Below, piece by piece: positions 5,783-43,546 of a stretch of 64,000 nt of DNA. The stretch covers positions 62,001-126,000 of the IMG/VR virus record IMGVR_UViG_3300017971_000190; one strand, given 5' to 3'. The notes beneath the pieces were generated by a model, which had not been told where the DNA came from, ran no database searches, and worked only from the letters and a program-made list of their open reading frames with translations. The position numbers and the translations under genes are program-made. Positions within the stretch are counted from its first letter, which is position 1, and every line of letters starts with the position of its first letter.

Positions 5783-6804
5783 CAACCATTAAAGTAGGAA
5801 AATACAATGTAGATGTGGCCAACTTTAATTGTAATAGTGAGTTAGAGTGTTTTCAACTTGGTTTTGATAAAGGAACATTTGTACAAGGTCGTGGCTATGT
5901 AAAATACCACAAGAAAGAAAAACCGGTGTGCCAGACTCGGCACATTCACGGTTGCCCTCGTGTTGGTGTTTGTCTCGATTGCAGAAGTGTAATTAGTCCC
6001 AGTACAGCTTTAGCTGGAATTTGTTCTTGGTGTAGAGGTACAAATATTCAGTTAGACGAAAAGGATGCTACTAGTAATGATACCATTAAATGAATATGGT
6101 TATAAAAAAGGAATACTTTACGCTGACTGGGGCTGTCCTACTTGTCGTAAAGTTGTCTACCAAAATACTACTGAAGACGCTTTTAGTAAAGAGCGTATCT
6201 GTCACAGTTGTCAAAAAGCGAATAAAGAAGCCGAAAGACGATCTAAACATCTTTGGGAATTAGCCCAAACTGAACGTCCTCCCATTAGGTACAAAAACGG
6301 TATTTATGGAATTAGAGATGATCTATTTTCTTACTTGATTGGAATGTCTACTCCAGTTATAGATAGAAACTTACAAAGGCTTTACGCAAAGTCAGATCTT
6401 CAAATTCCTCAAAGGATTATCCCTACGCATCATAAAGAGTTTTAAAAATGAAACGGTTAACCAGAAAAATAGTTCATGAAGAATTGCTCCATTTTAACTT
6501 ATTTACTGTAACTCCGACTATTAGAGGATTTGATTTAGGCTATGGGCAAGACGGGTTTACAAGACTTCTAACAGGTGGTGGAATAGCTGGTAATGGTTAC
6601 AAGTGGTGGCTGTGCACTATTGGTGGAGTAACGCTTGCTGGCCCGCTTGTAACCAAAAAGCAGCTACAACGCTGTTTAAGGGAACACTTAGCTGGTTATT
6701 GTAATCGACCACAAGATCAATCTGGTTGGAGAACGTATGCCAGACTAAATAAAAATAAAAACGGAGAACATTACATTTGGGTGCAAAGCAGGATACCACA
6801 ATGA
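5761..6804 (+). other. hypothetical CDSs 5761..6093, 6065..6445 and 6448..6804
   Basis: Overlapping co-directional ORFs; the first two carry CxxC pairs. Confidence 0.6.
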
Positions 6805-7715
6805 CAACTAGCAGAGTTTTAAAATTAGCCAGACAAAAGTTAATCACTCCCCCACCATTCGTAGCCGGATCTATTCAGTACGAAGTAATTATGGGAAGTG
6901 AAGCATATGGAGTCTCTTCTGGAGATAGCGATAGAGACGTATACGGTTTTTGTGTCCCACCAAAGTCTATAGTATTTCCTCACACAGTTGGAGATATTCT
7001 AGGATTTGGACGACAGAAAAAACGATTTGAACAATATCAGCAACATCATGTTTATGACAAAGATGCTTTAGGTGGTAAAGGCGTTGAATATGATTTTTCT
7101 ATTTATAATATTGTAAAATATTTTAGTCTTTGTATGGAAAACAATCCGAATATGATCGACTCTCTTTTCGTTCCACAACGTTGTATTCTTTATATTACTA
7201 AAATTGGTCAAATGGTTAGAGAGAAAAGACAGTTGTTTCTTCATAAAGGTGCTTGGTTCAAATTTAAAGGTTATAGTTACAGCCAAATCAAAAAGATGAA
7301 AATTAAGAATCCGGAACCAGGAAGTAAAAGATATGAGAATATTAAAAAATTTGGTTTCGATGTAAAATTTGCTTATCATGTGGTACGTCTTCTTAATGAA
7401 GTTGAGGAGATTTTAGTAGAACAACATCTTACATTGGATAGAAATAGAGAACAATTAAAAGCAATTCGACGTGGAGAGTGGACTTTAGAACAAGTTGAAG
7501 ATTATTTCAATAAAAAAGAAGCAGAGCTTGAAACTGCTTATACTGAAAGTAAATTACAACACAGTCCAAATGAAGAAGTTATTAAAAATTTACTTCTCTC
7601 TTGTTTAGAAGAGTACTATGGTAATTTAGAAAACTGTGTTGAAATTCCCAATGCTGAGAAAGAGGCATTAAGAGAGATTGATAGAACTCTTGAAAAAGTA
7701 AGACACTGCTTATAG
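6801..7715 (+). CDS. DNA polymerase beta superfamily nucleotidyltransferase (RlaP/YcgL-like)
   Basis: GSEAYG...DSDRD signature (hG[GS]x9-13Dh[DE]), NNPN.ID.LF and helical C-terminus FDVKFAYHVVRLL; ATG 6801 overlaps the upstream stop. Confidence 0.85.
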   Translation: MTTSRVLKLARQKLITPPPFVAGSIQYEVIMGSEAYGVSSGDSDRDVYGFCVPPKSIVFPHTVGDILGFGRQKKRFEQYQQHHVYDKDALGGKGVEYDFSIYNIVKYFSLCMENNPNMIDSLFVPQRCILYITKIGQMVREKRQLFLHKGAWFKFKGYSYSQIKKMKIKNPEPGSKRYENIKKFGFDVKFAYHVVRLLNEVEEILVEQHLTLDRNREQLKAIRRGEWTLEQVEDYFNKKEAELETAYTESKLQHSPNEEVIKNLLLSCLEEYYGNLENCVEIPNAEKEALREIDRTLEKVRHCL

Positions 7716-7732
7716 AAAACAGGTGGAAGAAA

Positions 7733-7966
7733 ATGACTCCTAAAGACAACAATTTTAATGGTATTACTGTGGAAGTGGGTGGTAAAGTAATTGGAAAAAT
7801 AAAAGAGTGGAAGCCACAAAAAGAAATACCTGAAAAACTGACCATACCAGGTATTGATTTTCTACCCCCAATTAGCAAATTTGACGAGTTTGTAAAAACT
7901 ATTCATCTTCGTGTTTCTAGAACTTGGTGTGATGTATTGAGAGCTATAGGAAGAGAAGATGAATAA
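7733..7966 (+). CDS. mini-protein resembling the N-terminus of the tail tube protein
   Basis: GITVEVGGKVIGKIKEW aligns with GITIEANGAVLGRIQSW of 42992..43546. Confidence 0.6.
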   Translation: MTPKDNNFNGITVEVGGKVIGKIKEWKPQKEIPEKLTIPGIDFLPPISKFDEFVKTIHLRVSRTWCDVLRAIGREDE

Positions 7967-8721
7967 TCCTCCTCACATGATTTTAGAAAATTGGGATGGT
8001 TTTGATTCCACTGCTGAAGTCTGGTTTGACCTAGCAAATGAAAAAGTAATTGTTAAGCAAAATTTTCCTGAGACACAGCTGCAAGGTTGCTTCTTTAAAG
8101 TGAGGTTTTCACTTTACCATCATTTGCCTTTGAAGGAATTTGAAGATGAAAAATGAAGACACTAAGTGGTACATCCTTACACTTGTTTTAACTATACTCT
8201 TCATGGTTGCCGGTATATTAGCAGTAGGAATGCACGCTAGAAAAACGGCTTTTGAACGACAATTAAATTACCATAAACGTAGAGACGGGACTTGCAAACT
8301 GTACCAAGAATCCAAAGAGCTAAAACTTCAAAATGAACACTTAAGACTACAGGTTGCTAGTTACACTGCTGCTAGGTGGAATAGTGTAGAAGACTATACC
8401 TCTTCTGTTTGTGATTTTCCACGCAAATTTGATCATCATTTTGACGTTGCTTTTGGGGGCTGTGAACTCGCTAAAAAAGGAGACAAGTGGGATTTAGCTA
8501 CTCGTAGTATGAGTAATCAAATACTGTTGTGGTATTGTAGAATTAGAGAAAACAGTCTCACCAATACATTACCAAAGAAACAAAGACGTAAATGGGAAAG
8601 GGATGCTGGCTTGTGTGCTCTCCGTTGGGCCACAATATTGGATGACTCAAGAGTGACTACTTTAGATACTTCAGTTGAGGGTCTTAGAGCTATCATTACT
8701 TGGAAAGTAAAGAGGGGATAA
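7959..8721 (+). other. hypothetical CDSs 7959..8156 and 8140..8721 (N-terminal TM helix plus coiled coil)
   Basis: Hydrophobic WYILTLVLTILFMVAGILAVG in the second ORF. Confidence 0.6.
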
Positions 8722-9522
8722 ATGACACTTCACTGGGTTATACAAAACAATCTTCACGAAGAACAAGGTTACGACGTTCTTGTGGAAACGGTTAAGCGAT
8801 TTGAACTCCCTCACACTTTCGTCAAGGTAATTCCTTTTTCTCATGAATTAGTTTCAGAAGACCCTCTTCCAGATCCTCCTGGTTTAAAAATAGTAATGGG
8901 CTCTATCAGTCTTGGCAAGGCAGCTGAAAAACTGGGTTGGTTACCAGGAGCGTTTATCAATAGTAATTTTCATTTTCGAGAGTGGAGAAAACACTACGGT
9001 CAGCATCTTTTAAATGATGACGCTACCATTTGTAAGTTCAAAGATGTCAAGTGGGATGAAGATTGGGGATCTTTCTTTATTCGTCCTTGTTTAGATGACA
9101 AGAGCTTTTCTGGTCAAATCCTGAGTTGGAAAGATTACGACAGTTGGCGTCACAAAGTAGTAGATCTACAAGAACACGATACATCTTTTTACTGCTTGAC
9201 TCCGGAGACAGAAGTATGTTACGGTAAACCAAAAGAAATCTACCAGGAGTGTAGATTTTTCGTAGTAGATGGGAGAATTGTAACTGGCTCCCAGTACAAA
9301 ATAGGTAGACGAGTAATCTCTAATGAAGTAGTGCCTCCTAAGCTCCAGGAATTAGCTCAAACTATGGTGGATTTGTGGCAACCTCACCGGGCTTTTGCTC
9401 TTGACATTGCTGACACACCAAACGGATTTAAAGTCATAGAAATTGGTTGTCTCAATAGTTGTGGGTTCTATGCTGCCAATGTCCAGAAGCTAGTATTAGC
9501 TTTAAACGAAATGGAGTTTTAA
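8722..9522 (+). CDS. ATP-grasp domain protein (DUF4343/R2K-like)
   Basis: FFIRPCLDDKSFSG, ECRFFVVDGRIVTGSQY and AFALDIAD...KVIEIGCLNSCGFY are ATP-grasp motifs. Confidence 0.85.
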   Translation: MTLHWVIQNNLHEEQGYDVLVETVKRFELPHTFVKVIPFSHELVSEDPLPDPPGLKIVMGSISLGKAAEKLGWLPGAFINSNFHFREWRKHYGQHLLNDDATICKFKDVKWDEDWGSFFIRPCLDDKSFSGQILSWKDYDSWRHKVVDLQEHDTSFYCLTPETEVCYGKPKEIYQECRFFVVDGRIVTGSQYKIGRRVISNEVVPPKLQELAQTMVDLWQPHRAFALDIADTPNGFKVIEIGCLNSCGFYAANVQKLVLALNEMEF

Positions 9523-15216: not shown

Positions 15217-15602
15217 AAATGGGTAAAATTGGATACGACAGATTTATTATGTATTGTTCAGACAAAGAGTTGATTGAAATATTAAATTATCTCGGAAAGA
15301 GATTTTTTATTATTACCGAATCAAAAGGTTTTTGGTCTGACAACCCAAAAGACAGGAATAGTGGTGAGTGTATTGCCCTCATGCATAGTGAATTAAGCGA
15401 AGCCTTAGAAGCCGTTAGAAACGATAATCCTCCGAGTAAAAAGATTCCAGAGTTTTCTAACTTAGAAGAGGAACTGGCAGACGTTATTTACAGAGTGTTG
15501 GAATATGCTCATGTTCATAGTTTAAATGTTGGAGGAGCACTCTTAGCAAAAGCCAGATTTAATGCCACTCGACCACACAAACATGGTAACAAGGTTTTTT
15601 AA
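15213..15602 (+). CDS. MazG-like nucleotide pyrophosphohydrolase (all-alpha NTP-PPase)
   Basis: ECIALMHSELSEALEA...LEEELADVIYR...K..FN..R.HKHG.K motif. Confidence 0.85.
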   Translation: MKMGKIGYDRFIMYCSDKELIEILNYLGKRFFIITESKGFWSDNPKDRNSGECIALMHSELSEALEAVRNDNPPSKKIPEFSNLEEELADVIYRVLEYAHVHSLNVGGALLAKARFNATRPHKHGNKVF

Positions 15603-28430: not shown

Positions 28431-30002
28431 ATGATTTTGAAAATCATCCCCATCCGTCCCGCTGGAAGACCACATCTGAAAAATATTAATCGTTACGTAG
28501 AAGGTTCTGAATTTTCAATAGAGCTTCATACGTTTAATGACGAAAAGACGTATGAGGCTTGGCTTGTAGAAAGAACCTCCATAGAAAGTATTGAGCACAG
28601 TACACTAAATATTCACGATTATAAAGGATTGGACAGCTGGCAAGTATTTGTCGTAGATGTTGAGAATTTCTTAGATGGAGACTTTGTTGTTTCTACTCAA
28701 ACCATTCTTTGCAATCGTATATTTCTGCTTAACGACAAGGGAAAGACAGTAGACACATTTAACACAACAAATCCATTAGTATTTCCTAGAAAGCGAGAAA
28801 ATGAAACTAAATTCATAGATGGACATGGAGGTACTGTTGAAATAGAAGATGGAAAAATTAAACATACTACACCATTAAAAAATGTTTTTGAATTAAAAAA
28901 TGTTTTTGATGGACTGAAAGAAAGTGTGGGGCAAGAATTTAGAAAAAGGCAAGAATTCGTAGCAAATTTAACTGAAGAACAAGAAAAAGAACTTGGAGCG
29001 CATTTTTATGGTGGTAACATTGGAGGGAAGGTAGAGGTTATAGAAGGGGTAACAGTCAAACCTTTAACTGTCGATAAACCAACTCCTTGTCCCTCCATTC
29101 TTCATTGGTGTACAGAACTGAAATATCTGGGCGGTAAAAATGTTTGGCCAGAGAATTTAAAAACTTTACTAGCTGCTTTTCAGGAACAGTGCCCCTCTTG
29201 TGGAGCTGCCCTTCGTTACGGTCGTTGTGTTCTTTGTGATAAATCCAAACAAGAATTATTTTCTCACCCGATCAATGAGGTAGTAGGAATTAGAGGGCAA
29301 CGCACTGGTAGCAGCTTTCTATCGGCCATAGCTGCTACCTACCAGTTACAAAAAATACTCTCTTTAGATATGAGTTTAAGTACCTACTATGATATGCCTC
29401 CTACGGAATTTGAAATGGTACTAGTAGATCCAGGAAAACATATTTGGAATCACTTTTGGGAATTAATACACAATTCACCTTGGTTTGAGCAATACTGGAG
29501 TTTCTTAAAAAATGCAGTTAATTGGGGTTTCAGTAGACCTAGCAATGATAAAGCTATTTTTACTGCCAACGAAAAGACGAATTTAATTGTACGAAGAGGA
29601 GGAGTGGAAGAGAACTACAAAGGAAAAACCAGAATTTTTGCTGCCATAGATGATCCAGATTGGGTAGATTGTTATGGTAATAAAGATAAACGGGTTCCTA
29701 TAGTAGATATTTATACAAGCCTTAAGAGTAGCCTTTCAACGGTGAAAAAGAAAGCTAACGATCAAAATTATAAATTGCAACCCTTGTTGTGGTTAATGGG
29801 TCCTCCTAACGGAGAAGGTGTAACTAAAAGTCTTCTTAGAAAAATAAAACAAGCTAAAAAGAAAAAAGTCAACCAACTAATTCTACATCAACCAACTTGG
29901 GAAATTAATCCAGAAACCAGCGAGGAAGAACTACGGAAAGAAGCCAGAAATGATGCAGAATTTCGTCGTGACTTTGGTGCTGAATTTGTAAAAGTGAAAT
30001 AA
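28431..30002 (+). CDS. fusion of an N-terminal LLNDKGKT domain and a degenerate terminase-large-subunit ATPase domain
   Basis: NEVVGIRGQRTGSS (Walker A-like, lacking Lys), SPWF, KGKTRIFAAIDD (Walker B DE to DD), HQPTWEINP and RRDFGAEF follow large-phage TerL order; ends before any nuclease domain. Confidence 0.7.
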   Translation: MILKIIPIRPAGRPHLKNINRYVEGSEFSIELHTFNDEKTYEAWLVERTSIESIEHSTLNIHDYKGLDSWQVFVVDVENFLDGDFVVSTQTILCNRIFLLNDKGKTVDTFNTTNPLVFPRKRENETKFIDGHGGTVEIEDGKIKHTTPLKNVFELKNVFDGLKESVGQEFRKRQEFVANLTEEQEKELGAHFYGGNIGGKVEVIEGVTVKPLTVDKPTPCPSILHWCTELKYLGGKNVWPENLKTLLAAFQEQCPSCGAALRYGRCVLCDKSKQELFSHPINEVVGIRGQRTGSSFLSAIAATYQLQKILSLDMSLSTYYDMPPTEFEMVLVDPGKHIWNHFWELIHNSPWFEQYWSFLKNAVNWGFSRPSNDKAIFTANEKTNLIVRRGGVEENYKGKTRIFAAIDDPDWVDCYGNKDKRVPIVDIYTSLKSSLSTVKKKANDQNYKLQPLLWLMGPPNGEGVTKSLLRKIKQAKKKKVNQLILHQPTWEINPETSEEELRKEARNDAEFRRDFGAEFVKVK

Positions 30003-38259: not shown

Positions 38260-41200
38260 ATGGCAAATGGCAACGTTGGAGATCTACGTTTAACTCAGAG
38301 TCAATATCTGAGACCTGGTGCGTACATTGGTTACATTTTTCAGGCTCGTCCTGTAAGTTCTAGCGGATTACCTCGTCTACCTGGTTATGTTGGACGCGGA
38401 AGTAGATTAGCACAGACTTTAAATTTCCAAATAATCAGAAGTTACATAAGAGAAAAGCAGTTATCTTTTTCGTTAGTGGCTCCTCATGTTGCTCCTCTCA
38501 CAAGCCCTGCCAGTCCTGATAAAACAATTGCGTCTCTTTACACTCAGGCTGGGTTAACTTTAAGAACAAATGTATGGCAATTTTCGGAAAGTGAACCTGG
38601 AAGTGGTGTCTACGACCAGATCGAAATTGCTATTACTGATTTTGATGTTAACGCTACCTATTATCTGGATTATCAAAGTACAGATCGCACCGTAGACGAC
38701 GAAATTGCAATTGACGAAATTCGTCAAATGTTAGAAGTTGGTGAAGCTGAAGGTTCTGACGAATACATAGAAAATGTTGACTACCGAATTGTTACCGAAA
38801 TTTTAGGTGATGTTAGTGGTGGAAATGCAGATGCTTTAATTCGGGATGAAAACAATTCAGATGGTGATGGTCAAACTGGGGTTATTACGGCTACCCTCCA
38901 AGGTGGTAGTACTGGTTCCATCACTCCCAATCCTGCGAGTAAGTATACATTTGAATATAGTATGAGTTATAATTTGCAGTGCATTGCTAGTGGGGGTATA
39001 GCTCCAGCTCGTTTTGCCACTTTCCAAATTTCAATTGATCCTCTTAGTGGTGGTAATGATCAAGTAGCTCCAGTTCCTAAACACCCCAGCTCTAATGAAG
39101 TCTTTCAGTTTACAATTAATGAATTGGTAAATGATACCAATTATCGTATTGACGCCAATTACCCCTTTACAGATGAAATCGCTTTAAATTTCTCATGGGG
39201 TGGGGCCAATTTCGTAGGTAATGTTGTTCCTGCAAATGCTGACCTTTTTGACTGGGATGCTCTTGGCCCACAATTAATTGAAATTAGTAGTGCTCATGAC
39301 AATACCAACCAATTTTCTGAAGTAACCGAACCCGCCGAAAATGGAAATATTGGTGGTGGTGCCAATACTACTAGTGGAGATATTACTCTTAATACCAATA
39401 CAAATTATGACAACTCTTTTGACCGCCATTATTATATGGAGGTAATTAGTGTTGGTGTAGGCCCTCGTACAGCTACGATTGCTTGGCGTGGTTGGGACGA
39501 AATGCCTTACACCTATGGCACTCTTAATTTAGATGAAAGTAACCCATCTTCTCTTACCAATATTTCTTTGGAAGAAGATATTTATCTTGACTTTGATTTT
39601 GGAGTTGAACATCTTTTAGCAGACGTTGGTGACTTACTGGTTTCACCAGACGCAACTGATTTAACTAGTGCTGTTACCCTTGCCACAGAAATTGGTGTAA
39701 ATTGGAATCGACACGACAATGATACTTTGGTAGCAGCTCATAATATTGGAAGTACAGGTAATCATCAAATTACCGCTGCTGTTCCTGTTGATGAGGCTAC
39801 CCTTAAACTTTTCTGCCAGGACGCTGAAACAGTTTACAGTGACCATATTGGGGATTCTGCAATGCACCCCAGTATTGACACAGTGTGGTTACTTGATAGC
39901 AGTATTACTTTAGACAGTTTAGTTAACTACATTGCTTTCCTAAACGACTTCAAAGTCAAAAATAATAGACACGTAATTGGGGTTAATTTTGTGGCTGGTG
40001 ACACTTGGCTTATGACAGCCAATGCTGCCATGCAATATTATACTGCTAAAGATAATCGCGAATATACTTTAACAACTACAACAGTAACTCCTGGTACCAG
40101 TGTTGAGTTCCAGTGGCGTGGTGATACCTATGAAAGCAGTTGGGGCAATAAAACTCCTACTGTTACCGATCCCTACATGGAGTTTACGGACAACATTACG
40201 TTAGCTCTCCGAAATTTTGACCCGTCAGGAACTTTAACTAATTACGATAGTGGTGATATTTTCACATTTACCACAGTTAACGACAATGAAATTGATTGGA
40301 CTCTTCGCCAAAGAGTTACGCAGAGTTTTGCTTCTGGAGATATTTATTTTGATAGTTTAGGTCGTAGAACCGGAACACCGGGTGCCTACTACGTTATTTT
40401 AGACGATACTCCTGAAACTATTAATAGAGTGGAAGACGCTGTTACAGGTAACGCTCTCAGTTATAGTATTGTCACAGATACTGGGGGAAATAATCTTCCC
40501 TACATCATGTTTATTACTAACCCCAACACGACAGTTGAGGTGACGTATGAACATAGAGGAAGTGAACCAGATCCAGGGTTAGTTTATTTTGTAAGTGTAA
40601 ACCGTCTTCGTTCTGATGATGAGTATAACACTCCTACTTTGTATCTTACTCGTGATTTACTGAATGAAGGGCTGCGTCCAAGCGAGACTACAAACCATAT
40701 TTGGATTATGGGTAATATTGCGTTTGATACCGGATTTTTCGGTTGCTACATTACTCAGGTGAAGAGTGCTAGCGAAGACGAAATTTATACAATTGCTGAT
40801 TACAGACGTGCAATTGATGCTACTGAAACCGTAGATGATATGACTGATTTGGTTGTACTGAGTCAGTACGAAGCTCTTGGTTATGCTAAATCCAGTGTTG
40901 AAAAAATGAGTAATCCTTTCATTGGGCGAGAAAGGTTACTTTGGCAGGGGGCAATGGCTAATACTCCAATTGGAGATTCCAAAACTCCTGACACACTTAT
41001 TTATTTATCTACACGAACTCTGCAGCCCAGTAGTGGAACAATTACCTCTCCAAGTCGTGGACGTTGTATTTTGACTGGAAACACTTGGGCAAAAAGAACT
41101 GTTACGTTAGATGACGGTACGTCTACTCAATTAGATTTAGACGGTTCGTTTATTGCAGGCTATGGAGCTGCTAGAACAGCAGCTTTCGCAGCTCCTTATG

Positions 41201-41742
41201 ATTCTCTTCTTAGAAAAGACTGTGCTAGTTTTGATGATATGGAGACCTTTAATAGTAAAGAATCTATTCTTGTTGGGAATGCTTCTATTCTTTATCTGGA
41301 TTCAGTTGGATCTGGTCTCTTCCGTTACAACGAAAGTGTGACGGTAGATCAAGGTGCTCCCGACGTTCACGAAATTTCTGCGATGACGCAGAAAGATTAT
41401 GTAACACGAAGAATTCGTTCCAAGCTGGACCTGAATTTAGTTGGTATTGTTCCTCCCAGCCCTGCTGCTGGTGTCATTCAGATTCAGAGTTATTTGGTTG
41501 GAGAGCTGGCTAATATTGTTAGTGAAGGATTTGTTGCTCCTTATGGTAGCGAAGAAAATCCACCTACAATTAGACCTATTAGTGCAGATGAAGATACACA
41601 GGTATTTGTAGACGAAAGAGACCGACGACGGTATCACCTTAAATATTGGTACAATATCATTTATCCAATTAAATGGATTCTGGGATTGTACAGTGTAGAT
41701 TCTAGATTCTGGGATAATAGGAGTCTGGCGTCTGCTCAGTAA
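38260..41742 (+). CDS. contractile tail sheath protein (very large)
   Basis: N-terminal YLRPGAYI motif; C-terminal sheath domain with HEIS...QKDYVTRRIR..L...VG and Y....YPIKWI; AGAGGAG RBS; adjacent tube gene. Confidence 0.85.
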   Translation: MANGNVGDLRLTQSQYLRPGAYIGYIFQARPVSSSGLPRLPGYVGRGSRLAQTLNFQIIRSYIREKQLSFSLVAPHVAPLTSPASPDKTIASLYTQAGLTLRTNVWQFSESEPGSGVYDQIEIAITDFDVNATYYLDYQSTDRTVDDEIAIDEIRQMLEVGEAEGSDEYIENVDYRIVTEILGDVSGGNADALIRDENNSDGDGQTGVITATLQGGSTGSITPNPASKYTFEYSMSYNLQCIASGGIAPARFATFQISIDPLSGGNDQVAPVPKHPSSNEVFQFTINELVNDTNYRIDANYPFTDEIALNFSWGGANFVGNVVPANADLFDWDALGPQLIEISSAHDNTNQFSEVTEPAENGNIGGGANTTSGDITLNTNTNYDNSFDRHYYMEVISVGVGPRTATIAWRGWDEMPYTYGTLNLDESNPSSLTNISLEEDIYLDFDFGVEHLLADVGDLLVSPDATDLTSAVTLATEIGVNWNRHDNDTLVAAHNIGSTGNHQITAAVPVDEATLKLFCQDAETVYSDHIGDSAMHPSIDTVWLLDSSITLDSLVNYIAFLNDFKVKNNRHVIGVNFVAGDTWLMTANAAMQYYTAKDNREYTLTTTTVTPGTSVEFQWRGDTYESSWGNKTPTVTDPYMEFTDNITLALRNFDPSGTLTNYDSGDIFTFTTVNDNEIDWTLRQRVTQSFASGDIYFDSLGRRTGTPGAYYVILDDTPETINRVEDAVTGNALSYSIVTDTGGNNLPYIMFITNPNTTVEVTYEHRGSEPDPGLVYFVSVNRLRSDDEYNTPTLYLTRDLLNEGLRPSETTNHIWIMGNIAFDTGFFGCYITQVKSASEDEIYTIADYRRAIDATETVDDMTDLVVLSQYEALGYAKSSVEKMSNPFIGRERLLWQGAMANTPIGDSKTPDTLIYLSTRTLQPSSGTITSPSRGRCILTGNTWAKRTVTLDDGTSTQLDLDGSFIAGYGAARTAAFAAPYDSLLRKDCASFDDMETFNSKESILVGNASILYLDSVGSGLFRYNESVTVDQGAPDVHEISAMTQKDYVTRRIRSKLDLNLVGIVPPSPAAGVIQIQSYLVGELANIVSEGFVAPYGSEENPPTIRPISADEDTQVFVDERDRRRYHLKYWYNIIYPIKWILGLYSVDSRFWDNRSLASAQ

Positions 41743-42991: not shown

Positions 42992-43546
42992 ATGGCAGGT
43001 CCAAGTCTTGATTATAGTGCTTTTGCATCTAATCCCTACGGTGTTTTAGTTAAACCGATTGACCACACTAATCCGGATGCTCCCACCAGTAAGACGTACC
43101 ATGGTATTACTATTGAAGCCAATGGTGCTGTTTTAGGTCGTATTCAGAGCTGGAATGTTAGTGGGGCATACACTCGTGAGGGTGAGCATGTTTATGAACT
43201 AAATAACCGTACTTGGGGACGACCTGTTGACTATGTTCCTGGCAGAGCTACTGGTTATAATATTGCTGCTACCATGGCAGAAATCTGGAATAAAGAAGTC
43301 GAAGTCCAATTGGGAATGGTTCGCAGTGGTAACCAGTGGGTAGATTTAATTGACCAGAATTTCCCCTTTACGTGCCGGGAATTCTGGTTCCGTGGTGCAG
43401 CTATTTATCGTGTTTGGACCTACAGAGGTTGTTGGTTTACCAATCGTAATGAAGAGAATTTCACGTCGGAAGGAAATGCTCGGGTAATCAGTAGTTTTGA
43501 ATTTAATTACGTAGCTCGACAACTTACCAGCGGTGTGGCAGCGTAG
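42992..43546 (+). CDS. tail tube protein
   Basis: GRIQSWN...VYEL...P...VPG...DQNFPF...W.Y.GCWF pattern of myovirus tube proteins; strong GAGGAG RBS; sheath-tube-chaperone-TMP order. Confidence 0.8.
   Translation: MAGPSLDYSAFASNPYGVLVKPIDHTNPDAPTSKTYHGITIEANGAVLGRIQSWNVSGAYTREGEHVYELNNRTWGRPVDYVPGRATGYNIAATMAEIWNKEVEVQLGMVRSGNQWVDLIDQNFPFTCREFWFRGAAIYRVWTYRGCWFTNRNEENFTSEGNARVISSFEFNYVARQLTSGVAA

What the first reader, a model, noticed from the sequence alone, without database searches (positions are those of the whole stretch)
7733..7966. Stand-alone 77-aa copy of the tail-tube N-terminal hairpin
GITVEVGGKVIGKIKEW aligns ungapped with GITIEANGAVLGRIQSW in the tube protein (42992..43546), with 9 of 17 identities and mostly conservative changes elsewhere. 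The ORF stops long before a tube fold could be completed and lies 35 kb from the tail genes. It could be a sensor decoy, a tube-polymerisation cap or inhibitor, or a remnant.
Basis: partly seen in the sequence, partly recalled or inferred. Interest (0 to 1): 0.7.

Follow-up and report, generated by a model that had tools for sequence, protein, structure and literature searches.

The report
Truncated copy of a tail-tube-derived gene
The 77-residue ORF really is related to the phage's tail-tube protein, but it is the shortened allele of a rare 130-175-residue tube-derived accessory gene of some uncultivated jumbo phages, having lost its C-terminal half by a deletion, so it is more likely a leftover than a purpose-built mini-protein.

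Summary
The ORF at 7733..7966 (+) exists. Its residues 3-29 match the first beta-hairpin of the 184-aa tail-tube-fold protein (42992..43546) far better than chance: 0 of 40,000 shuffles, Gumbel p about 1e-6; tube-family profile against the six-frame genome E 7e-5, next hit E about 5.

It is not an isolated hairpin duplication. It belongs to a small, unannotated family of ten tube-derived paralogues. The other nine are 128-175 aa long. One subgroup still aligns with the tube over positions 33-173.

In its nearest relatives, a 147-156-aa gene sits in the same slot: RlaP nucleotidyltransferase, paralogue, small genes, R2K ATP-grasp. DNA similarity to the closest relative (about 88%) stops at codon 71-72. 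The ORF ends five codons later, and its stop overlaps the next gene's ATG. So about 70 codons were deleted in this phage.

The retained hairpin is the family's conserved core (67% mean identity against 24-29% elsewhere). The lost half carried residues conserved in the other nine members.

Function is untested. The complex prediction gave no answer, and no RNA data or close variants were found. "Remnant" is best supported; a decoy or assembly-inhibitor role remains possible. Interest is moderate to low.

The parts
7721..7727 (+). Shine-Dalgarno-like AGGTGGA, 5 nt before the ATG of the 77-aa ORF
   Evidence: Read from the sequence. The same motif precedes the full-length homologue in L076.
7733..7966 (+). 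77-aa ORF: truncated allele of a tube-derived paralogue family
   Evidence: ORF list. Homologues are P0094, P0095 and P0097-P0101, 128-166 aa, plus a 175-aa member in L078. The gene was called identically in three assemblies.
7754..7819 (+). Residues 8-29: the beta-hairpin shared with the tail-tube protein. It is the conserved core of the paralogue family, with signature G-K-x-[IVL]-G-K-[IV]-x-x-W-[KRE]-P.
   Evidence: hhalign against the tube family, E 2.6e-8. Mean pairwise identity is 67% within the family, against 29% for residues 30-72. pN is 0.02 against L076.
7820..7943 (+). Residues 30-71: linker and start of a helix. Homologous to subgroup A9 only. In the model of the 147-aa homologue P0098 the corresponding stretch is mostly low-confidence coil (pLDDT below 50 over much of P0098 residues 34-62), followed by a short helix at P0098 residues 66-72.
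   Evidence: BLASTP against P0094 covers residues 2-72. AF2 model of the 147-aa homologue P0098.
7943..7958 (+). Deletion junction. DNA similarity to L076 (about 88% up to here) ends at about 7943-7948. The last five codons (G-R-E-D-E) follow.
   Evidence: DNA alignments. About 70 codons present in P0098, P0094 and P0097 are missing. No trace of them is found elsewhere in the record.
7959..8156 (+). Next gene (65 aa). Its ATG lies inside the last codons of the 77-aa ORF (ATGAATAA, 8-nt overlap). Its N-terminus resembles the gene downstream of P0094.
   Evidence: The next gene's start overlaps the paralogue's last codons in the same way in the P0097 contig (8 nt) and in L051 (14 nt). In L076 an ATG sits at the equivalent place inside the last codons of P0098, but no downstream gene was called there. 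A 17-nt patch matches L051 at 14 of 17 positions.
6777..7715 (+). RlaP-family nucleotidyltransferase, upstream neighbour and synteny anchor
   Evidence: Pfam PF10127, E 1e-16; phrog_388, E 4e-41. The same neighbour precedes P0097 and P0098.
8722..9522 (+). R2K-clade ATP-grasp protein, downstream synteny anchor
   Evidence: Pfam PF14243, E 3e-18. The same anchor follows P0097.
42992..43546 (+). 184-aa tail-tube-fold protein, the source family of the hairpin. The hairpin is residues 36-58, at 43097-43165.
   Evidence: 92 homologues. AF2 model and Foldseek hits to phage and CIS tubes, gpV and Hcp.

Best explanation
The 77-aa ORF is a deletion-shortened allele of a rare accessory gene that arose by duplication of the phage's tail-tube gene.

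Shown:
- An ancestral copy of the whole tube gene diverged into a small family of 128-175 aa. The family lost the tube's N-terminal arm and remodelled everything after the first beta-hairpin.
- The family keeps that hairpin as its conserved core, with changes at tube-invariant positions: R50 to K in all ten members, H37 replaced in eight of ten.
- In this phage about 70 codons (the whole C-terminal half) are missing, and the ORF's stop still overlaps the ATG of the next gene.

Inferred:
- The deletion probably kept the native reading frame and the gene's last few codons, so the ribosome-binding site, start codon and translational coupling to the next gene survive.
- The ORF is probably still translated. 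Its product would be one beta-hairpin, a mostly disordered linker and a helix stub, which could not form a tube-like domain alone.
- My best estimate is that this allele has lost most or all of the family's activity and persists because the deletion is young and harmless to downstream expression (about 50-55%).
- If it still acts (about 30%), it does so through the hairpin, by strand addition to whatever partner the full-length paralogue binds. That partner could be a host sensor of monomeric tube protein or the tube protein itself.
For: Homology chain:
- The ORF matches P0094 at E 1e-22 over residues 2-72 and P0098 at 77% identity.
- Subgroup A9 matches subgroup A8 at E 1.5e-26 over the full length.
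- A8 matches the tube family at E 1.5e-10 over tube positions 33-173.
- P0095 aligns with the tube gene of this genome over 167 columns by tblastn, E 7e-7.

Truncation:
- All nine other members are 128-175 aa.
- The slot is syntenic in the P0097 contig: DCD ... RlaP, 156 aa, 101, 73, 220, R2K. The window has RlaP, 77, 65, 193, R2K. L076 has RlaP followed by the 147-aa gene.
- DNA identity of about 88% ends at about 7943-7948.
- No C-terminal remnant is found in any frame of the 221.7-kb record.
- The lost half carries a Cys, an Asp and a Glu that are conserved in all nine other members.

Hairpin as the core: 67% identity against 29% and 24% elsewhere, plus family-specific residues.

Accessory status:
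- Only 1 of 25 tube-related jumbo-phage records (G003) has a second copy.
- None of 80 RlaP loci has one within 4 kb.
- No Pfam or PHROG family matches.

Hint of relaxed constraint: five derived residues on this branch against one on P0098's branch.
Against: - dN/dS against L076 over the retained 72 codons is 0.14 (dS 0.81). The hairpin has one amino-acid change in 22 residues. This is what a still-selected gene would show, although a recent deletion gives the same picture.
- The relative-rate asymmetry is not significant (p 0.22).
- The part that is kept is exactly the family's most conserved module, so residual function is plausible.
- The direction of change (deletion here, rather than gain elsewhere) rests on parsimony over ten sequences.
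- The in-frame nature of the deletion rests on junction geometry, not on a clean DNA alignment of the 3' end.
- There are no expression data.
Confidence: 0.7

Rival explanations
1. A functional hairpin-only mimic, acting as an immune decoy or sensor blocker. The product presents the tube's N-proximal hairpin to a host sensor of tube monomers (DSR2-like or Avs16-like) without the rest of the fold. It occupies the sensor without triggering it.
For: - Tube proteins are known triggers. In the DSR2-SPR tube structure, the long N-proximal hairpin beta-h1 passes through a hole in the sensor (PMC11850899).
- Avs16 is modelled on the conserved tube hairpin (PMC12803255).
- The family is sporadic, fast-changing outside the hairpin, lies outside the tail module, and is altered at tube-invariant residues.
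- The retained part shows low dN/dS.
Against: - No sensor, host or interaction is known for this phage.
- It is not shown that the conserved hairpin corresponds to the long inter-ring hairpin of solved tubes.
- The truncated form is unique to one phage clone.
- The deletion removed residues conserved in all nine other members.
- No decoy derived from a tube protein came up in the three literature searches run here.
Confidence: 0.15
2. A tube-assembly modulator. The hairpin adds as an extra strand pair to tube subunits and delays, caps or poisons polymerisation, either of the phage's own tube (timing) or of a co-infecting relative's tube.
For: - The hairpin is 40-60% identical to tube hairpins.
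- In solved tubes, hairpins make the ring-ring and subunit-subunit contacts.
- The paralogues lack the N-terminal arm and have changed tube-invariant residues, as expected for a form that does not polymerise.
Against: - The complex prediction with two tube copies gave a score of 0.00 with low pLDDT. That is no answer, not evidence either way.
- An assembly factor would be expected in all relatives and near the tail genes. Complete genomes G007, G009 and G013 lack it.
Confidence: 0.1
3. Chance or convergent similarity. The G-x-V-x-G-x-I-x-x-W pattern would be a generic beta-turn-beta motif, and the ORF would be unrelated to the tube.
For: The tube profile's only PDB sequence hit is the analogous hairpin of a CBS-domain protein (MJ0100), at E 0.3. 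This shows that the pattern recurs in unrelated folds.
Against: - The shuffle and genome-wide statistics argue against chance.
- Seventeen independent genomes return the tube gene.
- The transitive full-length homology chain runs from the ORF to the tube.
Confidence: 0.02
4. Not a gene: an open frame that happens to survive in a decaying intergenic stretch and is not translated.
For: The ORF is short and has lost half of the ancestral gene. No RNA or protein evidence was found.
Against: - The SD-like site and ATG are conserved with L076.
- The ORF is tightly packed in a same-strand gene array, with its stop overlapping the next start.
- dN/dS is 0.14.
- Three independent gene callers called it.
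Confidence: 0.03

Closest known systems
Tail-tube proteins of contractile tails and injection systems (phage 812 tube 8q01/8r5g, PVC/AFP/AlgoCIS tubes, lambda gpV, T6SS Hcp)
   Same: The source gene at 42992..43546 has this fold. The ORF shares the fold's first beta-hairpin by descent.
   Different: The ORF has 77 aa, against 140-190 aa for a full tube protein. It lacks the N-terminal arm, most of the sandwich and the C-terminal strands. Tube-invariant H37 and R50 are replaced. It lies 35 kb from the tail genes and is absent from most relatives.
Tube-fold paralogues inside tail modules (tube initiators, distal tail proteins and other duplicated tube-like baseplate or neck proteins). Established knowledge; they also appear among the Foldseek hits.
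   Same: They arose by duplication and divergence of a tube-like gene.
   Different: Those paralogues keep the whole fold, are virion parts, sit in the structural module and are conserved across relatives. This family is reduced, sporadic, and sits next to nucleotide-metabolism genes.
DSAD1, the phage inhibitor of the tube sensor DSR2 (PMC10981675, PMC11087589)
   Same: Only the proposed logic is shared: a small phage protein that occupies a sensor of tube protein.
   Different: No sequence or structural relation was tested or is claimed. DSAD1 is not described as tube-derived in the abstracts retrieved. A function for the present family is unproven.
CBS-domain beta-hairpin motif (MJ0100, PDB 3kpb)
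   Same: It has a similar local pattern (hydrophobic-x-G-K-[LIV]-V-G-I-[IV]-x-x-W).
   Different: The E-value is 0.3, the fold is different and there is no further similarity. It is a look-alike, not a relative.

Membership tests
Tail-tube protein (tube/Hcp/gpV fold) | Complete two-sheet beta-sandwich with flanking helix, about 140 aa or more | tested here: not met
   The ORF has 77 aa. Only tube positions about 31-57 are alignable. The model of the nearest full-length relative shows one hairpin followed by coil and helices.
Tail-tube protein (tube/Hcp/gpV fold) | Family-invariant residues of this phage clade's tube (H37, G49, R50, W54 ...) | tested here: not met
   G and W are kept. H37 is N and R50 is K in the ORF. 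K replaces R50 in 10 of 10 paralogues.
Tail-tube protein (tube/Hcp/gpV fold) | Encoded in the tail module and present in all related phages | tested here: not met
   The ORF lies 35 kb from the tube gene, between RlaP and an ATP-grasp gene. A second copy occurs in only 1 of 25 related records.
Tail-tube protein (tube/Hcp/gpV fold) | Common descent with tube genes | tested here: met
   A homology chain runs from the ORF through A9 and A8 to the tube.
Tube-derived small paralogue family (defined here; alignment A6) | Hairpin signature G-I-T-x-x-x-x-G-[KE]-x-[IVL]-G-K-[IV]-x-x-W-[KRE]-P close to the N-terminus, with no tube N-arm | tested here: met
   Residues 10-28 of the ORF carry the signature. 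Invariant G10, I11, G17, G21, K22, W26 and P28 are all present.
Tube-derived small paralogue family (defined here; alignment A6) | Same genomic slot as the other members | tested here: met
   RlaP lies upstream and R2K ATP-grasp downstream, as for P0097 and P0098. The neighbours of P0094, P0095, P0101 and the G003 copy all map within about 8 kb of the ORF.
Tube-derived small paralogue family (defined here; alignment A6) | C-terminal half with the conserved Cys, Asp and Glu (in subgroups A8 and A9, the A-Q-L-x-x-W-G ... P-x-x-C ... F-D-x-E block) | tested here: not met
   This half is absent from the ORF and from every frame of the record. The ORF is therefore a truncated member.
Anti-defence decoy of tube sensors (DSR2 or Avs16 targets) | Binds the sensor and prevents activation by tube protein | not testable with these tools
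   The host and its sensors are unknown.

The most novel reading that the evidence does not exclude
The tube-derived paralogue family, possibly including this hairpin-only allele, would be a phage counter-defence that mimics the tube protein's N-proximal hairpin. It would occupy host sensors of tube monomers (DSR2-like or Avs16-like) without activating them. The 77-aa form would then be a natural minimal version, defining the epitope that is sufficient.
Probability: 0.12. Interest if true: 0.75.

Novelty: new variant of a known kind. Interest (0 to 1): 0.35.

Why it matters
Duplicated tail-tube genes are common, but they normally stay in the tail module as full-fold virion parts. This is a reduced tube derivative that keeps only one hairpin as its constant element. 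It sits among nucleotide-metabolism genes, occurs sporadically, and has no Pfam or PHROG family.

Tube proteins and their hairpins are now known triggers of bacterial immune sensors. Such a family is therefore a reasonable place to look for structural-protein mimics used in counter-defence or in the control of assembly.

The 77-aa allele by itself is most likely a recent deletion product. Its main value is as a pointer to the family, and as a natural truncation that could show whether the hairpin alone is sufficient for whatever the family does.

Tried and rejected
- Pfam and PHROGs on the ORF and on all ten family members gave nothing significant.
- tblastn of the ORF against 50,697 phage records gave only a weak hit, to the tube homologue of Virus Rctr197k.
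- The word-indexed protein search with the ORF found only itself. The exhaustive search was needed to find P0094 and P0095.
- A split or frameshifted gene was considered and rejected. The 65-aa ORF in the +1 frame does not match the C-terminal halves of the family. No C-terminal remnant exists anywhere in the record.
- Recent gene conversion from the tube gene was rejected. The two hairpins share only an 11-nt identical run and are otherwise diverged at the DNA level.
- The complex prediction (two tube copies plus the ORF) scored 0.00 with pLDDT 32-43 and gave the verdict 'no answer'.
- The AF2 model of P0098 has low confidence (pLDDT 59), so no fold search was run on it.
- ESM Atlas look-ups of P0095 and P0096 gave no lead; scores were 0.6 or lower and TM below 0.4.
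- For expression, no RNA run was listed. The DNA runs X1 and X2 look like one data set filed twice and show no variants.
- The three assemblies are identical over 12.2 kb, so they give no population signal.
- Scans of viral contigs and metagenome contigs with the family profile added only one member, L078.
- The promoter and terminator scan near the ORF was not different from shuffled sequence.

Full report
**1. What is there**

The window is bases 62001-126000 of a 221,679-bp IMG/VR virus record, estimated 63% complete. The same sequence also lies on a 298-kb ENA contig. It is an uncultivated jumbo phage.

ORF 7733..7966 (+) encodes 77 aa. It has an ATG start preceded by AGGTGGA at 7721-7727. 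It sits in a dense array of same-strand genes:
- a dCTP deaminase lies further upstream;
- a RlaP-family nucleotidyltransferase (6777..7715) lies directly upstream;
- a 65-aa ORF (7959..8156) follows, with its ATG inside the last codons of the 77-aa ORF (ATGAATAA);
- then come a 193-aa ORF and an R2K-clade ATP-grasp protein (8722..9522).

**2. Is the similarity real?**

Yes.
- BLASTP aligns residues 2-27 with tube residues 30-55: 30.4 bits, pairwise E 8e-7.
- The Smith-Waterman score is 68. Shuffle means are about 25 (sd 4) and the maximum is 58. None of 20,000 shuffles of either partner reached 68, and Gumbel p is about 1e-6.
The ORF against the six-frame record hits the tube gene at E 0.0037.
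- A profile of 40 tube homologues hits the ORF at E 7e-5. A profile of the hairpin alone hits it at E 1.5e-6. The next best pieces are at E 0.16-5.
- hhalign against the tube family gives probability 95% and E 2.6e-8. The match improves against the family consensus, down to the W-x-P-Q that follows the hairpin.
- In 17 of 25 related jumbo-phage records, the ORF's hit is that phage's tube hairpin.
- In the public phage collection, the ORF and the tube protein both hit the same ORF of Virus Rctr197k.

One caveat applies. The local pattern resembles the generic beta-turn-beta motif of CBS domains (E 0.3). The hairpin alone would therefore be a thin basis for homology. The argument below does not rest on it alone.

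**3. The 'tube' gene is a tube gene**

ORF 42992..43546 has 92 homologues of 165-233 aa. Its AF2 model (pLDDT 71) gives Foldseek hits to the phage 812 tail tube (E 3e-7), the PVC, AFP, AlgoCIS and Anabaena CIS tubes, lambda gpV and Hcp. The shared segment corresponds to the first two long strands of the model (E34-43 and E46-55).

The 1160-aa ORF just upstream, presumably the sheath, has no family or PDB sequence match. I did not verify it.

**4. The ORF belongs to a family of longer, tube-derived proteins**

An exhaustive phmmer search of 1.84 billion representatives found two relatives:
- P0094: 152 aa, E 7.5e-14, 51% identity over residues 2-72;
- P0095: 166 aa.

A profile search added P0096-P0101, and a metagenome scan added a 175-aa member, L078. 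That makes ten members in three subgroups.

| Subgroup | Members | Length | Relation to the tube family |
|---|---|---|---|
| A9 | P0098, P0094, P0097 | 147-156 aa | Nearest to the ORF; P0098 is 77% identical over the ORF's length. Aligns with the tube only over the hairpin. |
| A8 | P0095, P0101, L078 | 152-175 aa | Aligns over tube positions 33-173, 121 columns, E 1.5e-10. P0095 aligns by tblastn with this genome's tube gene over 167 columns, E 7e-7. |
| A10 | P0096, P0100, P0099 | 128-131 aa | Aligns over tube positions 32-109, E 9e-11. P0096 is from the complete 349.8-kb genome G003. |

A9 and A8 are homologous over their full lengths (E 1.5e-26). The family therefore stems from a duplication of the whole tube gene, followed by reduction.

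All members lack the tube's 30-residue N-terminal arm. The hairpin is the constant element: mean pairwise identity is 67%, against 29% for the next 43 residues and 24% for the rest.

The paralogues share derived states at tube-invariant positions:
- K for R50 in 10 of 10;
- no His at H37 in 8 of 10;
- W-[KRE]-P after the hairpin.

They are thus one old lineage rather than repeated recent copies. The DNA comparison of the two hairpins in this genome confirms this, since they share only an 11-nt identical run.

**5. In this phage the gene is truncated**

Synteny:
- In the contig carrying P0097 the order is DCD ... RlaP (305 aa), P0097 (156 aa), 101, 73, 220, R2K ATP-grasp.
- L076 has RlaP followed by P0098.
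- The window has RlaP, 77, 65, 193, R2K.

The window and L076 are about 88% identical from the end of RlaP through codon 71-72 of the ORF (about position 7943-7948). After that, all similarity is lost. The ORF ends five codons later.

The roughly 70 codons present in P0098, P0094 and P0097 are absent. No trace of them is found in any frame of the record.

The junction geometry is preserved:
- In the P0097 and P0094 (L051) loci, the called start of the next gene lies inside the last codons of the paralogue, with overlaps of 8 and 14 nt.
- In L076 an ATG sits at the equivalent place inside the last codons of P0098, which would give an 11-nt overlap. No downstream gene was called there, because the contig ends 40 nt later.
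- In the window the overlap is 8 nt.
- The beginning of the 65-aa ORF resembles the gene downstream of P0094, with a 14-of-17-nt patch coding P-P-x-x-I.

I therefore read the event as an internal deletion of about 210 bp that kept the frame, the last few codons and the coupling to the next gene. The deletion itself is well supported. Its in-frame character is an inference from geometry, because the 3' ends are too diverged for a clean DNA alignment.

**6. Functional or leftover?**

For a leftover:
- It is the only short member among ten.
- It is known from a single phage clone. Three assemblies are identical over 12.2 kb, and the two DNA runs look like one data set.
- The deletion removed a Cys, an Asp and a Glu that are conserved in all nine other members, along with the A-Q-L-x-x-W-G block shared by A8 and A9.
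- The model of P0098 suggests that what remains is a hairpin, a low-confidence linker and a helix stub.
- Five derived residues fall on this branch against one on P0098's branch, which is not significant (p 0.22).

For retained function:
- The start and the SD-like site are intact.
- dN/dS against L076 is 0.14 over the 72 retained codons, at dS 0.81.
- The hairpin has one replacement in 22 residues.
- The retained module is the family's core.

A recent deletion explains the low dN/dS equally well, and no closer relative is available to date the event. No RNA run was listed.

**7. Mechanism**

The family's function is unknown. No Pfam, PHROG or Atlas lead was found.

Its properties are as follows:
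- it is tube-derived but altered at tube-invariant residues;
- it lacks the N-terminal arm;
- it is variable outside one hairpin;
- it is sporadic: a second copy occurs in 1 of 25 tube-related records, is absent from the complete genomes G007, G009 and G013, and is absent from all 80 RlaP loci;
- it lies outside the tail module.

These properties fit a tube mimic that does not polymerise and that binds something which recognises monomeric tube protein. Two candidates are a host sensor and the tube itself. For the sensor, DSR2 engulfs the tube domain and threads its long N-proximal hairpin (PMC11850899), and Avs16 is modelled on the conserved tube hairpin (PMC12803255).

Neither candidate could be tested. 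The complex prediction with two tube copies returned 'no answer'. I also could not establish whether the conserved hairpin is the long inter-ring hairpin of solved tubes.

I estimate the probabilities for the 77-aa allele as follows:
- crippled leftover: about 0.5-0.55;
- residual hairpin-mediated activity: about 0.25-0.3, split between decoy and assembly modulator;
- chance similarity or not a gene: about 0.05.

**8. Verdict**

There is real tube homology and the 'remnant' option is favoured. The ORF is not an independently copied hairpin.
- Novelty: a new, reduced variant of the well-known habit of duplicating tube genes. The specific ORF is an ordinary deletion allele.
- Interest is 0.35. 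It would be higher (about 0.75) only if the family proves to be a structural-protein mimic used against tube-sensing immunity.

Noticed in passing
L077:777-1196 (+), contig that carries paralogue P0101: A 139-aa ORF begins with about 25 residues that match the N-terminal arm of the tube family (the part the paralogues lack; hhalign probability 83%, E 9e-6). A Cys-rich CxxC...CxxC region follows. So a second piece of the tube N-terminus may be reused in a non-structural protein two genes upstream of the paralogue. No equivalent was found in this record (best E 0.11).
   Followed up: partly
L033:1480-1875 (G003:C1:236469-236861), complete 349,793-bp jumbo phage with terminal repeats: A 131-aa tube-derived paralogue (P0096) lies about 198 kb from that phage's tube gene. 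It aligns with the tube over the hairpin and the helix region (E 2.4e-11). Its downstream neighbour matches window 15243-15599 at 50% identity.
   Followed up: partly
window 7754-7819 compared with L076: The hairpin-coding stretch is also unusually conserved at synonymous sites (pS 0.22, against 0.58 in the next 43 codons). The numbers are small: 3 against 16.5 synonymous differences. It could be chance, codon bias in Lys/Glu-rich sequence, or a nucleotide-level constraint.
   Followed up: partly
window 6448-7715 compared with L051: The RlaP nucleotidyltransferase gene lies between the 118-aa gene and the paralogue in the window, in L076 and in the P0097 contig. In L051 the 118-aa homologue abuts the paralogue directly. 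RlaP is therefore an indel among close relatives.
   Followed up: no
window 28431-30002 (+): A 523-aa ORF matches large-terminase profiles only with its C-terminal part (residues 287-518 against profile positions 402-645 of 940). It may be a diverged or split terminase.
   Followed up: no
window 38260-41742 (+): The 1160-aa ORF three small genes upstream of the tube gene, presumably the tail sheath, has no Pfam, PHROG or PDB sequence match at the thresholds used.
   Followed up: no
runs X1 and X2: The two DNA runs that hold the stretch give contigs of identical lengths, with identical loose ends and nearly equal depths. They are probably one data set filed twice and should not be counted as independent samples.
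   Followed up: no
window 7959-8156 and 8140-8721: Gene callers disagree on the starts of the two genes after the ORF: 59 or 65 aa for the first, and 172, 191 or 193 aa for the second. The region between the paralogue and the ATP-grasp gene is about 650 bp shorter here than in the P0097 contig, which is more than the roughly 210 bp lost from the paralogue itself.
   Followed up: no
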